Below, piece after piece: positions 45,323 to 63,169 of a stretch of DNA of 64,000 bases. The DNA lies in assembly GCF_022045235.1 (NCBI RefSeq), contig NW_027266297.1, positions 14,632,001 through 14,696,000 of the forward strand, written 5' to 3'. The position numbers and the translations under genes were made by a program. The stretch comes from Haliotis cracherodii. Taxonomy: Eukaryota. Position 1 is the stretch's first letter. Every line of letters starts with the position of its first letter. The notes beneath the pieces were generated by a model. It did no database searches. It was not told the origin of the DNA and saw only the letters and a list, made by a program, of their open reading frames with translations.

Positions 45323-47737
45323 ATGAATGCGAGCACGTATGTTCAAGGTACAATTCTGACTTTGTTTCCATGTCTTTATGATCCTGTAACATTATTAGAC
45401 AATGTGAAGTGACAGTGCCAATCTTAGGTCCATTTCTGTATACGTAAATATACCTGGGGTACAGTTGTCCAGTACCTGTGCCGACAATGACCCCAACATC
45501 GACCGTAGACCTATAGGCCGAGCCTACCCCAGTGATTTCTTCCGCAGGGTTTCGATTTTGTGTTGAAAAAAATACGTGGGAATAGCCCAATAATTTCGAA
45601 CGTTAGTTTGAGAGATTAGCAGCCTGTTGTATCAAGGCTAAATGTCTATATAAATATATATACATACTACATATAAAGGAGGCAGGCCTATACATCAACC
45701 CACACTAGAAACTTCCGATTTCTTTGATGTTAACCATAAGCTGACCCCAAAACACGTCTGAAAAACTTGGAAACCGTTAGAGCTGCAAAGGAAGGAGCTC
45801 GTGCAAATCTGTTCCAAAAATGGCATACGGTATCGGTATGTACCGCAATCCTGCCAATGACGTGTAGGGAGACACACATGTCGTTTGTCCCTTCACTTGA
45901 TGAAGATCCTTTTAGACCTACAACCGTCTCTGCCATTGGTGAATTGCGAAATTACCAACAACTGCATGGTGCCCTCAGTCCATAATCATACAACATAGGG
46001 TAGACTTTTTTAAAATGCATTCGGCCTCACATTCTACCCCACGTTTTACATGAACTCACCTGTGTCTGTTTGTGTTGAAATGGTAACATTGTCACATGAC
46101 CAGCTGGACTGCAATGTGTCTTAACCCTCTGGCTGCCACCTAAAAATAGCCTGTGTACTATCGCTGTATTTATTTCAATTCTTTTAACATGATGTTTCAG
46201 AAGGACATATATGTCACTCTGGCACAGCAACTGTGTTTTGTGTAGGGACATACATGTCCAAATGGCATCCAGAGGGTTAAGGATGAGTCCAGTCTCCTAA
46301 ATAAGCATCCCTTATTTGAGTTTGAAATGAAATTAAACATATTACAATGATAGACATTATGTTCTCATAGGTTAGTATATGTATGAGGGGAAATCGAAAC
46401 GTTCTGGTCACATGGGAGGTTTCACAGAACTTGTATGAAGGAGAACATCTCTTGGATTATGACACATCAAGTTACAAACAAATAATTGTATCTGGTTTTG
46501 AGAAAGTATTGCTGGGCCAAGTGTATTAAAGGAAATTTACATTGGAAAAATAATTTTAATTCTGAACAATTTTCTATGTGAGGCAACAAACTTTTCGATT
46601 TACCCTCTGAAGTGGCTTGTACTCAATGTCTTACCCTTCCATTCCCTCACAGTTGATCGGATGATCTGGTTCCCCCTGCCTCTGTACCCCCTGCCTTTTC
46701 CTGCCCCTTCTCCAGTAGGTGTTATAGGGGCCTGTTATTATGTATATTCTTAGTGTTTAGCTCTGCATATAATATGATATTGTGTTTCCACTATCACTTA
46801 CATGTGGAAAACATTAATATACTGGTTGAAATTTAACATCCTAAATATTACACTAAATATGACATACTTCCCAAACTAAAAGAAAACCAACAAACATTAT
46901 TATATATTCTTGTCCTAAACAAACGGTTAAAGACAAATTCTACCAACTGGATGTATGACTATGAACAGCTTACCAGTATACTTGGCCTGGCATATACTTT
47001 GTTATTTGGTATTTCCTAGAAAATCCTTCATATTGTCTATTTTTGATTATGTAATCTCCACCTCTCTTTATTGAATGTGTACTTGAAACAATACAAGTCT
47101 TCTGTTTGGATCACATTGTCTATGGTTTCTCATAGAAAGAATCTCAGCTCTCAATATACATATTTCCAATACTGCAATAGACCATTCGGTCATTCACGTC
47201 ATATCTGCTTTACCTTTGTCTGTACCTCACATCAGCTTTTTACCATCATTCATTATCTACTATATAAAATAATATCATTTTTGTTTACTTCATGTACAGA
47301 TTTAATTCTTAATCGTAACCACCTATAGACTTTTCACTCATACCTTCATCACTTTTCTGGCTCTACCGACAAAATTTCATATTTGCTACAATAAAATTCA
47401 ATAATTGAATAACTTTTTCTTCAACATAATATTCTTTCCTCACGTCCCATTCTTTCCACTAACTCCCTCTCTATAGCAACCCACTTCAAAGTCCCTGACC
47501 ATCCCTGCCTACTTGTCCCACCTGCCCGTCCCACAGACCCTTCGCCCCAGCACTGTCCCTTCTGTGTCCCTCACTATCGCTGGTCAGTACATCGTGGACG
47601 ACACTGACTTTGTTGAAGTAGATCTCATGGATGAGGAGATCGTCCAGCCAACCCACTCCTTCCTGAAGGCCTTGCTATCCAGGGTGGCCAACTTCTTCAG
47701 AAGAGTCAAGAGTGTGTTTAAGAAGAAGGATGATTAG
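45323..47737 (+). CDS. Unrecognised 3-exon gene, copy 1 (paralog A), 115 aa. Exons 45323-45347, 46653-46714, 47477-47737
   Basis: ACCATGA start context; GT-AG introns of phase 1 and 0; product MNASTYVQVDRMIWFPLPLYPLPFPAPSPQPTSKSLTIPAYLSHLPVPQTLRPSTVPSVSLTIAGQYIVDDTDFVEVDLMDEEIVQPTHSFLKALLSRVANFFRRVKSVFKKKDD; exons and splice sites conserved with paralog B while intron interiors look unrelated; AATAAA 47876-47881. Confidence 0.72.
46125..46276. mobile_element. piggyBac-type MITE in intron 1 of paralog A
   Basis: TTAA|CCCTCTGGCTGCCA ... TGGCATCCAGAGGG|TTAA. Confidence 0.75.
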
Positions 47738-48780
47738 GCAGTGAATTCTGAACACAAAAATATATACTTATACAAAACATTTATGAACCATTTTTGGGAG
47801 TGTTGAGGCATTTGTTACAATATTTGGGAAATACATAAATTTTACCTTTATTTGTTTTATTGTTTTCTTTTTAGTAATAAAACACGTTATTTGTTACAAA
47901 TTTTGGTTGTGTTTTCATTTGCTCATTTGGTCTGCTAGTTTATGGCGATGTTCTGGACTAAGTCATGGTGATCAAACATGTAGTTCATAAGCAGCTGCCA
48001 CATTGGGGAAGACACGCTGGTGCACCATATAAACAAGTGTTCGATTAGGGTCAACCCACCTTATTCTGGAATGAAATTGGTGTTTTGTCCACACTGACAA
48101 ACCTAGAAATATAAGTAGGGCGAATCCGGCATTCAAACACACGGTCTTTGGTTGCTGGCATGCTTAAGGGACGCAACTCTGCACAGTGACCTGAGGCGCC
48201 TAAGACTGGTCCCATGTAAAACCCGCTAAGGATTCTTGAAGAAGGATGATTAGGCAATGAACTATGAACACATATGTATATACTTACATACAAAACATTT
48301 ATGAATCATTCTTGGACTGTTGAGGCATTTGTTATAATATACGGGTGGCTCAGTCGTGTACTTAGGCGCCGCGATTCGATGTGCAGAGTTGCGTCCCTTG
48401 GGAAATTAACATTCCAAACGTCACATCCACTCACATACTAAGTAGTTTACATGTACATTACTTAATCTTCACACAAGTGTTTTTAGGATAATAAATATGT
48501 GAAACTCATGAATATGTGAGTGAGTCCTCCTTTAGGACTCTTGACGCATTTGTAACAATATTTAGGAAATATATTACTTGCAAAATGTTTGGTAATAATC
48601 AAATCATTAAGTAGAAAGTTGTACCACGAACAATACATACCTTCTGACCACCATGGGAAATTAATGCATGGAGTGTGGCAGACGTTGTACCACAAATCAT
48701 TTTGTCGAGTTCTTTCCGACACTGGAATAATGACATGGCACCACAGCATTGTGTTTTCAAGGCCCCAAACAATTTTTACA

Positions 48781-61377: not shown

Positions 61378-63169
61378 ATGAATGCGAGCACTTATGTTCA
61401 AGGTACAATTCTAATTACGCTTCATTAGATTCCGTACCTACACGTTGGTATATATTAGTGTGATGAGGCAGTGTGTATCATCATGTTCATGATCTGTCAT
61501 GGCTCCTGTACTGAACCACAAACACTTTGATACTTTGGGGGCTTAAGATGTTGAATGCAGGGCCCTTTGTGTACTTTGAACTTTATTTGAAAATGTGGGT
61601 TCTTGTGTCTTTTACATCTCAATGACATTCTTTATGCGCCTTTCCTACCATGGTAACATGTTGATTTGGTTGTAAAATGAATTCCGTAAATTTATTTACA
61701 GTGGTTTACATGAAGTGTTTGTGAGTCTTGGGAAGGGTTTTGGGTGAGAACTGCCCGTACTTGAGTTACAAATAGCCCAAGTGGAACACACCCCAGCCCC
61801 CAGGCCCTTTTTATAAACCTGGATCTGCCCATGATTTCTTATAAACTCTCAGAACTGACACAGCAGTCTGTTTGTATGGTTAGGCTGAATCCCTTGTATT
61901 GTATCAAATAGAATTAGTTTAGCAGTGAAAGGTAAACTGTAACTTATTATCCCATATTTTGTCTGAAGGGATCAAGTTGTAAAGTAACAAGGAGAAATAC
62001 GTTGTAGTGTCTAGGCAACTTTATCCAACATAAAACTGGAACATTTTGGAAAAGGGGAACCCCTAAAAGCTTAGCGATATATGACCTATCTGTTAGCACA
62101 AATAATTTATTAACTGCAAAATGATATATTATTTACTAGTCACCAGCCAAAGGTTAGTGACCAGCAACATACATTCTGGGCGTTTAATACCCTGTATGTT
62201 TATTTTTCTGTTTCCCCACAGTTGATCGGATGATCTGGTTCCTCCAGCCTCTGTCCCAACTGACTTATCCTGCCCCTTGCCATGTAGGTGTCATAAAGGC
62301 TTGTCTATAGCAATGCCTGTTTAGCACTTCCATGAGTTTTCACCGATATGTGGAACACTTCTGTGTACTGGTCCCTGTTTTTATAAAGCTGTAACTGAAT
62401 GTTTATACTGTTTTCCTACCTTAGAAACTAACAGTATGCAATTAACAAAGTCCTATTATGAATGTTGAGAGTACTTTGGTTCAAAGACTTCAGTAATTCT
62501 GTAAAGTTTTACATTTGTATTTCAAAGAATATCCTTCATATCATCATCTTTACGATCAATGCTCATGATGTCAATCACTGAATTGTCTGGTCAACTCGAT
62601 TATTTACAGACAGCCATCATATAGCTGGAATATTGCTGAGTGAGGCATCAAACAGCAAGCAAACAAACAAACAATCTACCTTCCCTTTGCATCATCTACG
62701 TTTCAGTATTTACTATTCAATATATATCATCTTTATTTACCTTCTTTCTTGTTTCACACCTTTTCTGTCTTTACCACCATAATGTTTTATTTGCTACAAT
62801 AAAATTCAAAGATTGAATAACTATTTCCCTCTAATAATATTCTTTCCTCACATTCCATTCTTTCCACTACCTCCCTATCTATAGCAACCCACTTCAAAGT
62901 CCCTGACCATCCCTGCCTACTTGTCCCACCTGCCCGTCCCACAGACCCTTCGCCCCAGCACTGTCCCCTCTGTGTCCCTCACTATCGCTGGTCAGTACAT
63001 CGTGGACGACACTGACTTTGTTGAAGTAGATCTCATGGATGAGGAGATCGTCCAGCCAACCCACTCCTTCCTGAAGGCCTTGCTATCCAGGGTGGCCAAC
63101 TTCTTCAGAAGAGTCAAGAGTGTGTTTAAGAAGAAGGATGATAAGGCAGTGAACTCTGAACACATATAA
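61378..63169 (+). CDS. Unrecognised 3-exon gene, copy 4 (paralog B), 123 aa with C-terminal extension KAVNSEHI. Exons 61378-61402, 62222-62283, 62885-63169
   Basis: AAG in place of TAG at 63143-63145; 3' flank diverged from copies 1-3. Confidence 0.7.

What the first reader, a model, noticed from the sequence alone, without database searches (positions are those of the whole stretch)
45323..63169. Four-copy array of an unrecognised spliced small-protein gene with an acidic LIR-like motif and a C-terminal cationic amphipathic helix
Seen: the ORF track shows only a 74-aa fragment starting at TTG, but there is a 3-exon gene (25, 62 and 261 nt). Its ATG context, exons and splice sites are conserved between copy 1 and copies 2-4 although the intron interiors look unrelated, which points to selection on a real gene. 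The 115-aa product has no obvious signal peptide. It has a Pro/Ser/Thr-rich N-half, then DDTDFVEVDLMDEE, then SFLKALLSRVANFFRRVKSVFKKK (hydrophobic residues at i, i+3/4, i+7, with eight basic residues in the segment). Established: acidic residues followed by F-x-x-V/I/L is the ATG8/LC3-interacting region consensus (cf. optineurin EDSFVEI), and such helices bind membranes. Inference: a lineage-specific, copy-number-amplified selective-autophagy receptor or membrane-active intracellular effector, in which the acidic segment could alternatively neutralise a lytic helix. I do not recognise the family.
Basis: partly seen in the sequence, partly recalled or inferred. Interest (0 to 1): 0.8.

Follow-up and report, generated by a model that had tools for sequence, protein, structure and literature searches.

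The report
Amplified abalone small disordered-protein gene array
The four tandem three-exon genes are real and already annotated (as uncharacterised) in the black abalone genome; they belong to a large abalone-only family of small disordered proteins with a conserved LC3-binding-like motif and a basic membrane-type helix, whose function is still untested.

Summary
There are four tandem copies of a 25/62/261-nt, GT-AG, three-exon gene. Copy 4 has lost its stop codon and runs 8 codons further. The gene is not unrecognised: NCBI's Haliotis cracherodii annotation already holds the 115-aa model of copies 2-4 as an 'uncharacterized protein'. Similar models exist in H. rubra, H. rufescens and H. asinina.

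Exon 3 is identical because copy 1's 3' half lies inside a very young 5.24-kb repeat (5235 matches, 1 mismatch). Selection is nevertheless shown in two other ways:
- All 85 of 85 exon-3 matches in this genome are free of stops.
- dN/dS is about 0.2-0.5 between diverged paralogues.

The protein has no Pfam, PDB or viral relatives and no signal peptide or membrane-spanning segment. AlphaFold2 predicts disorder plus one C-terminal amphipathic helix.

The F-V-x-[VI]-x-L acidic motif is invariant across subfamilies and closely matches validated LIRs. Binding to ATG8 is untested. RNA support is thin: one spliced contig. This scan had already found the same family on other DNA (s1-841665).

The parts
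45195..45322 (+). Copy 1: conserved upstream block (putative promoter and 5'UTR) with three TGACG-like half sites
   Evidence: Aligns with copy 2; the roughly 60 nt at about -145 to -85 are the best conserved part. With exon 1 it is found 16 times in the genome at 71-100% identity. A promoter role is inferred.
45323..45347 (+). Copy 1, exon 1 (25 nt; MNASTYVQ plus 1 nt), followed by GT
   Evidence: 24 of 25 nt are identical to copy 2.
46653..46714 (+). Copy 1, exon 2 (62 nt), flanked by AG and GT
   Evidence: It differs from copies 2-4 at 11 of 62 nt, with dN 0.23 and dS 0.15.
47477..47737 (+). Copy 1, exon 3 (86 codons plus TAG)
   Evidence: dN/dS is 0.18-0.5 against the diverged paralogues L017 and L018.
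47597..47626 (+). Codons for DDTDFVEVDL, the LIR/GIM-like acidic strand motif (copy 1)
   Evidence: The F and the L five residues after it are invariant, and the position three after F is V or I in every aligned member.
47654..47725 (+). Codons for the C-terminal basic amphipathic helix (residues 89-112 of the 115-aa NCBI model)
   Evidence: AlphaFold2 helix 89-112, with block mean pLDDT of 76-84. Hydrophobic moment 0.70.
47738..47892 (+). Copy 1, 3'UTR with AATAAA at 47876-47881
   Evidence: Read from the sequence. 155 of 155 nt are identical to copy 2. The polyadenylation site is inferred.
47470..62884 (+). Young tandem repeat: three units of 5241, 5244 and 4923 nt, measured from one exon 3 start to the next. 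The left edge lies about 7 nt before exon 3 of copy 1
   Evidence: Unit 1 against unit 2: 5235 matches, 1 mismatch, 13 gap columns. Unit 2 against unit 3: 4917 matches, 1 mismatch, 331 gap columns. The last mismatch before the long identical run is at 47469.
51211..51235 (+). Copy 2, exon 1
52055..52116 (+). Copy 2, exon 2. Its donor site is used in one contig of run X1
   Evidence: Joint 52116 to 52863 with GT..AG ends, 1 contig, depth 81.
52718..52978 (+). Copy 2, exon 3
   Evidence: The exon translations of copy 2 agree with NCBI model P0001.
56455..56479 (+). Copy 3, exon 1
57299..57360 (+). Copy 3, exon 2
57962..58222 (+). Copy 3, exon 3
61378..61402 (+). Copy 4, exon 1
62222..62283 (+). 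Copy 4, exon 2
62885..63169 (+). Copy 4, exon 3. The stop is changed from TAG to AAG and the frame is extended by 8 codons (KAVNSEHI)

Best explanation
These are four tandem paralogues of a Haliotis-restricted family of small proteins (about 100-115 aa) that are probably cytosolic and largely disordered. A fifth copy lies about 16 kb beyond the window.

Each protein has three parts:
- a Pro/Ser/Thr-rich disordered N-terminal part;
- an invariant acidic strand motif, (D/x)-x-D/H-F-V-[E/D]-[V/I]-x-L, followed by an acidic run;
- a C-terminal basic amphipathic helix.

Most likely mechanism (inferred, not shown): the protein is a minimal adaptor or decoy. The helix sits in-plane on a negatively charged membrane, or is masked by the neighbouring acidic segment. 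The acidic strand docks by beta-strand addition onto a ubiquitin-like partner, most probably an ATG8/GABARAP protein, since F-V-E-V fits the LIR and GIM consensus.

The array itself is a young 5.24-kb repeat that carries one gene per unit. Copy 1 is a chimera: an older 5' half joined to the young repeat just before exon 3.
For: Gene model:
- Every intron has GT-AG ends, and the exon translations of copies 2-4 agree with NCBI model P0001.
- Matching models with the same N-terminus exist in three other Haliotis species.
- The exon 2 and upstream/exon 1 blocks each occur 16 times in the genome.
- One X1 contig uses the exon 2 donor and joins it to exon 3 sequence. X1 has zero depth in the non-repeat intron bins, whereas X3, X7 and X16 cover the introns.

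Selection:
- 85 of 85 genomic exon-3 matches have no stop, down to 39-44% identity.
- dN/dS for exon 3 is 0.18-0.22 against L017 and 0.35-0.59 against L018.

Architecture:
- AlphaFold2 gives mean pLDDT 59, and the only structured element is helix 89-112.
- Hydrophobic moment is 0.57-0.79 in 11 of 11 members examined.
- Charge is -8 for residues 66-88 and +6 for residues 89-115.
- There is no signal peptide or membrane-spanning segment.

Motif:
- F74 and L79 are invariant and V75 nearly so in 20 sequences. F45 and L50 are invariant in 14 sequences.
- The published consensus is [W/F/Y]-X1-X2-[I/L/V] for the LIR and [W/F]-[V/I]-X2-V for the GIM (PMC5538626, abstract).
- Validated LIRs listed in that paper include OPTN EDSFVEIRM, ATG13 HDDFVMIDF, TP53INP2 VDGWLIIDL and FUNDC1 DDSYEVLDL (its Tables 1 and 2, passages seen). 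The abalone DTDFVEVDL and DTDFVEIDL closely resemble these, including the D-L/F that follows the core.
Against: - No binding, localisation or expression data exist. The canonical LIR core is short and often non-functional (PMC12582063, abstract).
- The same strand, with hydrophobic residues flanked by acidic ones, could equally be a SUMO-interaction motif or bind some other partner.
- Amplification to 85 or more copies is not typical of known autophagy receptors.
- RNA evidence is a single contig from a run whose RNA status is only guessed. Its acceptor side maps to 52863, inside exon 3, with 'between: not known'. It therefore does not confirm the annotated exon 2 to exon 3 junction.
- No X1 depth was seen over exon 1.
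- The second half of exon 2 shows no purifying selection (dN 0.23 against dS 0.15).
- No protein from a transcriptome assembly matched subfamily A: all 11 hits come from NCBI genome annotation.
Confidence: 0.35

Rival explanations
1. The protein is a precursor or storage form of a membrane-lytic or antimicrobial cationic helix. The neighbouring acidic segment neutralises the helix until it is cleaved or released. Amplification reflects immune dosage or an arms race.
For: - A strongly amphipathic, basic C-terminal helix: +6 over the best 18 residues, hydrophobic moment 0.70.
- An adjacent segment with charge -8.
- Tandem amplification with near-identical copies, as is common for immune effector genes (general knowledge).
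Against: - No signal peptide in 6 of 6 family proteins scanned.
- No basic processing site between the acidic segment and the helix: the sequence there is ...EEIVQPTHSF....
- The residues best conserved across the family lie in the acidic strand as well as in the helix, which a mere neutralising spacer would not need.
- The helix ends in acidic residues.
Confidence: 0.12
2. The acidic hydrophobic strand is a SUMO-interaction motif or binds another partner by strand addition. The protein would then act in the nucleus or cytosol, unrelated to autophagy.
For: - F-V-E-V followed by D-L-M-D-E-E is a hydrophobic core with an acidic tail. This resembles the SIM consensus as I recall it; I checked no SIM consensus in a paper.
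- PMC12582063 (abstract) treats SUMO-SIM as a related kind of short-motif interaction.
Against: - The aromatic F is invariant in 20 of 20 sequences. An aromatic residue is required in a LIR but not, as I recall, in a SIM.
- The 9-mer resembles validated LIRs closely.
Confidence: 0.12
3. This is an ampliconic, fast-evolving gene family kept by copy-number dynamics, for example germline-restricted expression or genetic conflict. The conserved motifs would serve a role not predictable from sequence.
For: - 85 or more copies in arrays on at least 10 contigs, 44 of them on C3.
- Units 99.98% identical.
- A chimeric copy 1.
- The family is restricted to one genus plus two unnamed ENA contigs.
- Exon 2 has dN at or above dS.
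Against: - No expression data of any kind.
- dN/dS below 1 over exon 3 shows ordinary purifying selection on the protein.
- This reading does not exclude the adaptor mechanism.
Confidence: 0.15
4. The gene is an annotation artefact or a non-functional repeat that happens to keep an open frame.
For: - Exon 3 identity within the window is explained by recent duplication.
- RNA evidence is minimal.
- Copy 4 has lost its stop.
Against: - 85 of 85 frames are intact down to about 40% identity.
- dN/dS is well below 1.
- Splice sites are conserved in all copies, and the N-terminus is conserved in four species.
Confidence: 0.05

Closest known systems
LIR/GIM-bearing ATG8 adaptors and receptors (optineurin, ATG13, ULK1, TP53INP1/2, FUNDC1)
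   Same: An acidic, disordered motif with an aromatic residue and a V/I three residues later. The abalone DTDFVEVDL and DTDFVEIDL compare with OPTN EDSFVEIRM, ATG13 HDDFVMIDF and TP53INP2 VDGWLIIDL (Tables 1 and 2 of PMC5538626). F-V-E-V fits the GIM [W/F]-[V/I]-X2-V (abstract of that paper).
   Different: - No sequence homology outside the motif (no Pfam hit).
- The protein is only 115 aa and has no known cargo-binding, kinase or reticulon domain.
- It is amplified to 85 or more copies.
- Binding is untested.
Precursors of cationic alpha-helical antimicrobial peptides, with an anionic pro-region next to a cationic helix
   Same: An acidic segment (-8) directly next to a basic amphipathic helix (+6), and a multicopy gene family.
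   Different: No signal peptide, no basic cleavage site before the helix, and the acidic strand itself is the most conserved element.
Small disordered proteins encoded in tandem macrosatellite arrays, such as the human GAGE/PAGE families
   Same: One small gene per repeat unit of a few kb, near-identical units, a disordered product of about 110 aa, and a lineage-restricted family.
   Different: No sequence similarity is known. Expression in the germline or elsewhere was not examined for the abalone genes.
Scyphozoan giant repeat proteins (Rhopilema esculentum LOC135694323 and a Sanderia malayensis protein)
   Same: Each unit of about 190 aa carries an acidic TDFNFEDLEE-type motif and later a basic helix, PQGGFVRTISGKVTGRFKRIF, that resembles the abalone helix.
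   Different: - Each repeat scores only about 3-11 bits.
- Profile-profile probability is 18.6% for the helix, and P is 0.63 for the acidic motif.
- Homology is not established.

Membership tests
LIR/AIM-containing ATG8-binding proteins | Core motif [W/F/Y]-X1-X2-[I/L/V] (PMC5538626, abstract) | tested here: met
   The window genes have F-V-E-V. F is invariant and the fourth position is V or I in 14 of 14 and 20 of 20 aligned family members.
LIR/AIM-containing ATG8-binding proteins | GABARAP-selective GIM [W/F]-[V/I]-X2-V (PMC5538626, abstract) | tested here: met
   Met by the window's subfamily (F-V-E-V). Subfamilies B and C have I in the last position (F-V-E-I, F-V-D-I), so they fit the LIR but not the GIM.
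LIR/AIM-containing ATG8-binding proteins | Acidic or phosphorylatable residues before the aromatic residue, in an accessible disordered region | tested here: met
   D-D-T-D precedes F. AlphaFold2 shows no regular structure there: the 10-residue blocks covering residues 61-90 have mean pLDDT 51-58.
LIR/AIM-containing ATG8-binding proteins | Physical binding to an ATG8-family protein that depends on the motif | not testable with these tools
   Only single-chain prediction is available, and there are no experiments.
Selective autophagy receptors | A second module that binds cargo or anchors the protein to a membrane | tested here: inconclusive
   A C-terminal amphipathic helix is predicted. Membrane binding was not tested, and no known cargo-binding domain is present.
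Secreted cationic alpha-helical antimicrobial peptide precursors | N-terminal signal peptide | tested here: not met
   The N-terminus has no hydrophobic core: the highest 8-residue Kyte-Doolittle mean among windows starting in the first 25 residues is 0.75-1.61, and D and R lie at positions 10-11. This holds for 6 of 6 proteins. This was a simple scan, not a trained predictor.
Secreted cationic alpha-helical antimicrobial peptide precursors | Cationic amphipathic helix | tested here: met
   Hydrophobic moment 0.70 and net charge +6 over 18 residues. For the 24-mer, 60 of 10,000 shuffles reach the observed moment.
Secreted cationic alpha-helical antimicrobial peptide precursors | Processing site between the pro-region and the mature peptide | tested here: not met
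   No K or R lies between the acidic run and the helix (...DEEIVQPTHSF...).
SUMO-interaction-motif proteins | A hydrophobic core of three V/I/L residues in four positions, flanked by acidic residues (consensus recalled, not checked) | tested here: inconclusive
   F-V-E-V followed by D-L-M-D-E-E comes close, but the first position is F. No SIM consensus was read in a paper.
Any curated protein family (Pfam-A) or solved structure | A significant profile match | tested here: not met
   - The exon 3 peptide gave only one Pfam match, below threshold (E 0.099).
- P0001, P0012, P0013 and P0014 gave 0 Pfam families.
- The PDB profile search gave 0 matches at E up to 10.
- The ESM Atlas gave no usable hit.

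The most novel reading that the evidence does not exclude
Abalones have amplified, to about a hundred copies, a minimal adaptor or decoy that binds ATG8/GABARAP: a LIR/GIM motif plus an in-plane membrane helix, with the helix held in check by the neighbouring acidic segment. On this reading, the copy number and the rapid turnover of the arrays reflect an arms race over autophagy, for example with the intracellular bacteria or viruses that afflict abalones, or a conflict in the germline. This would be the first massively multicopy family of autophagy adaptors.
Probability: 0.15. Interest if true: 0.75.

Novelty: new variant of a known kind. Interest (0 to 1): 0.42.

Why it matters
If the motif really binds ATG8 proteins, this would be an unusually small autophagy adaptor, restricted to one genus and carried in about a hundred copies. 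It would be a natural minimal system for studying how a LIR and a membrane helix work together. It might also be relevant to disease resistance in an endangered abalone.

If the motif does not bind, this remains an ordinary orphan gene family that the public annotation already holds. It would then be of interest mainly as an example of rapid tandem amplification and chimeric paralogue formation.

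Tried and rejected
Searches for a known family all came back empty:
- Pfam on the exon 3 peptide and on four family proteins.
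- PDB sequence profile.
- ESM Atlas.
- IMG/VR viral contigs: 154 pattern matches, none confirmed.

Homology to the jellyfish giant repeat proteins was considered, because the profile search gave summed E-values of 1e-22 to 4e-5. I rejected it as unproven. Each repeat scores only about 3-11 bits and hhalign gives 18.6% probability.

A caspase-type VEVD/VEID cleavage site was considered from reading the motif. I dropped it because the D is not conserved: subfamily C has N there and subfamily D has L.

A C-terminal KKxx retrieval signal was considered for the window's subfamily (consensus recalled). I dropped it because there is no membrane-spanning segment and because subfamilies B, C and D end differently.

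A fold search was not run, because the model is mostly low-confidence.

Literature searches found nothing:
- Eight LOC identifiers of H. rubra and H. rufescens family members: 0 papers.
- A 14-residue stretch of the helix: 0 papers.
Tables of differentially expressed abalone genes there might list these loci.

The promoter block with TGACG-like sites was noted but not interpreted.

Full report
**What is in the sequence**

The region 45.2-63.2 kb holds four copies of a three-exon gene.
- The 42-nt stretch that encodes the acidic motif occurs four times, against none in 100 shuffles.
- The repeat families have start-to-start spacings of 5241, 5244 and 4923 nt.
- In every copy the exons are 25, 62 and 261 nt long, and all eight introns run from GT to AG.
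- I translated each exon separately. Exon 1 gives MNASTYVQ plus one base. After its first two bases, exon 2 gives DRMIWF followed by a variable Pro-rich stretch. Exon 3 starts in phase 0 and gives 86 residues that are identical in all four copies.
- In copy 4 the stop is changed from TAG to AAG, and the frame runs eight codons further, to 63169.

**The gene is already annotated**

- A search with the exon 3 peptide returned 11 proteins, all from NCBI annotation of Haliotis genomes.
- Among them is a 115-aa 'uncharacterized protein' of H. cracherodii (P0001). Its sequence agrees with the three exon translations of copies 2-4.
- P0002 differs from the copy 1 translations by one residue.
- The contig length given for P0001 (73,386,740) equals that of C34, the contig that holds the window.
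- Models with the same N-terminus (MNAS[ST]YV[QR]VDRM[IV]WF...) exist in H. rubra, H. rufescens and H. asinina.
- 'Unrecognised' is therefore wrong for the gene model, although the family has no name or known function.

**How the array is built**

- Measured from one exon 3 start to the next, the units are 5241, 5244 and 4923 nt long.
- Units 1 and 2 differ by 1 mismatch and 13 gap columns over 5235 matches. Unit 3 differs from unit 2 mainly by 331 gap columns.
- The near-perfect identity begins at about 47470, seven bases before exon 3 of copy 1.
- Upstream of that point, copy 1 is only about 83-86% identical to copies 2-4. The 200 nt upstream are 84% identical without gaps. Exon 2 matches at 51 of 62 positions. 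Intron 2 is 83% identical where it can be aligned. Intron 1 cannot be aligned.
- Copy 1 is therefore a chimera of an older 5' half and the young repeat.
- Because the 3'UTR (155 of 155) and the next 508 nt (508 of 508) are as identical as exon 3 (260 of 261), exon 3 identity inside the window says nothing about selection.
- A fifth copy lies about 16 kb beyond the window (L005).

**Evidence that the gene codes for protein**

- The exon 3 peptide has 85 matches in this 1.18-Gb genome. Identity goes down to 39-44%, and none contains a stop.
- The matches are spread over ten contigs: C3 has 44, C80 12, C34 10, C56 8, C12 4, C7 2, C9 2, and C11, C23 and C45 one each. Most lie in tandem arrays.
- Between diverged members of the window's subfamily, exon 3 is more alike than its flanks and dN/dS is below 1. 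Against L017, dN is 0.10-0.14, dS is 0.46-0.67 and the ratio is 0.18-0.22. Against L018 the ratio is 0.35-0.59.
- All three thirds of exon 3 show dN below dS in 8 of 8 pairs examined.
- Exon 2 is the exception. Between the two 5' types, dN is 0.23 and dS is 0.15 over 20 codons, so its Pro-rich second half is unconstrained or diversifying.
- The exon 2 block and the upstream/exon 1 block are each found 16 times in the genome.

**Transcript evidence is thin**

- The look-up of sequencing runs listed no holder on record as RNA. Fifteen of the holders are small runs guessed to be RNA, from six coded organisms.
- I laid four runs on 48420-53700, which covers the intergenic region and copy 2.
- X1 has one contig (depth 81) that leaves exon 2 exactly at its donor (52116, GT) and resumes after an AG at 52863, with 63 letters on the shorter side.
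- Position 52863 lies 145 nt inside exon 3, and the tool marks the gap as 'between: not known'. The contig therefore confirms use of the exon 2 donor and a link to exon 3. It does not confirm the annotated acceptor at 52718. A direct join at 52863 would be out of frame, since 145 is not a multiple of 3.
- X1 has zero depth in the non-repeat bins of both introns. Its only contig that enters intron 2 has depth 4.6, against 57-81 for the exon pieces. This pattern looks like RNA. X1 also shows no depth over exon 1.
- X3, X7 and X16 cover the introns at low, even depth and look like DNA.
- All 11 database proteins of the subfamily come from genome annotation, none from a transcriptome.
- One distant relative, P0016 (102 aa), sits complete on a 503-nt ENA contig. 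Given the introns in Haliotis, this would fit a spliced mRNA.

**The protein**

- The exon 3 peptide gave only one Pfam match, below threshold, and the four family proteins gave none.
- No PDB sequence relative was found at E up to 10.
- The ESM Atlas gave no usable hit, and no relative was found in IMG/VR.
- A profile of 14 exon 3 peptides, searched against 1.84 billion representatives, found only 9 proteins: four Haliotis representatives, two unnamed ENA contigs and three jellyfish giant repeat proteins.
- The jellyfish matches are sums of repeats that score about 3-11 bits each. Profile-profile comparison gives 18.6% probability. I treat them as look-alikes, not relatives.
- The Haliotis family has at least four subfamilies of 102-115 aa that share an N-terminus (M..S.YVQ..D...F), the central motif and the helix.
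- Invariant residues in 20 aligned sequences are S60, F74, L79, S90, S97 and R98. M1, F15, P25, P57, S58, D71, V75 and R105 are nearly invariant.
- AlphaFold2, given that alignment, predicts disorder (mean pLDDT 59, pTM 0.21) with one helix at 89-112, where block mean pLDDT is 76-84.
- The helix is strongly amphipathic: the hydrophobic moment is 0.70 over 18 residues with net charge +6, and 60 of 10,000 shuffles of the 24-mer reach the observed moment. The preceding 23 residues carry -8.
- A hydropathy scan shows no signal peptide or membrane-spanning segment in 6 of 6 proteins.

**The motif**

- The published consensus is [W/F/Y]-X1-X2-[I/L/V] for the LIR and [W/F]-[V/I]-X2-V for the GIM (PMC5538626, abstract).
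- The window genes have D-D-T-D-F-V-E-V-D-L, which fits both.
- Subfamilies B and C have F-V-E-I and F-V-D-I, which fit the LIR only.
- The paper's tables of tested LIRs list OPTN EDSFVEIRM, ATG13 HDDFVMIDF, TP53INP2 VDGWLIIDL, TP53INP1 DDEWILVDF and FUNDC1 DDSYEVLDL (passages seen). Even the invariant L two residues after the core therefore has parallels.
- This is as good as a motif-level match can be. Even so, canonical motifs can be non-functional (PMC12582063, abstract), and the same strand could serve SUMO or another partner. No tool here can test binding.

**Verdict**

The family is lineage-specific and amplified, the LIR-like motif is conserved, and the amphipathic helix is predicted. 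The gene is already annotated, the selection argument was wrong in its detail, and the function remains an inference.
- My best reading, at about 0.35, is a minimal adaptor that binds membranes through its helix and presents a LIR-type strand.
- The rivals are a masked lytic peptide, a SUMO or other partner, an ampliconic family of unknown role, and an artefact.
- The same family was found earlier in this scan on another piece of this genome, with the same conclusion (s1-841665; also s1-826274). I reached my reading before seeing those notes, and they add no independent evidence.

Noticed in passing
window 4100-5017: A minisatellite that looks like coding sequence, with a 14-residue (42-nt) period and long ORFs on both strands.
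   Followed up: no
window 20000-26000: A GC-rich block (49-59% against about 40% elsewhere) with overlapping minus-strand ORFs at 21487-24107. None of these ORFs gave a Pfam hit at E up to 0.001. It may be a decayed mobile element.
   Followed up: partly
window 37479-41012 (minus strand): Pieces of a BTB-BACK-Kelch gene. BTB scores E 8e-14 and BACK E 2e-12. The Kelch matches are weak and at or below Pfam's cut-off.
   Followed up: partly
window 48951-49127, 52314-52667, 53199-53700: Very high-copy repeats inside each array unit, one of them in intron 2. Depths run from the thousands into the hundreds of thousands in all four runs. The repeat at 53199-53700 has tRNA-like GGATTCGAACC letters at its loose ends.
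   Followed up: no
window 48238-48340 (and the same place in units 2 and 3): An extra fragment resembling the 3'UTR lies about 510 nt downstream of each true 3'UTR. It is 87.5% identical over 104 nt (family D14). It may be a remnant of an older partial duplication.
   Followed up: partly
window 45195-45262 and 51083-51150: A block about 145-85 nt before the ATG holds three TGACG-like half sites. It is better conserved between the old and young 5' halves than the sequence further upstream. Together with exon 1 it occurs 16 times in the genome.
   Followed up: partly
P0015, P0017, P0019 (jellyfish proteins, not in the window): Giant proteins built of repeats of about 190 aa. Each repeat holds an acidic TDFNFEDLEE-type motif and a basic helix resembling the abalone one. 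Similarity is too weak to call homology.
   Followed up: yes
G000 C80, C3, C9, C56, C11, C7, C23 (loci L016, L021-L030): Copies of subfamily C are scattered over at least seven contigs. Their exon 3 and the polypyrimidine tract before it are nearly identical. This suggests recent dispersal at the DNA level; the mechanism was not examined.
   Followed up: no
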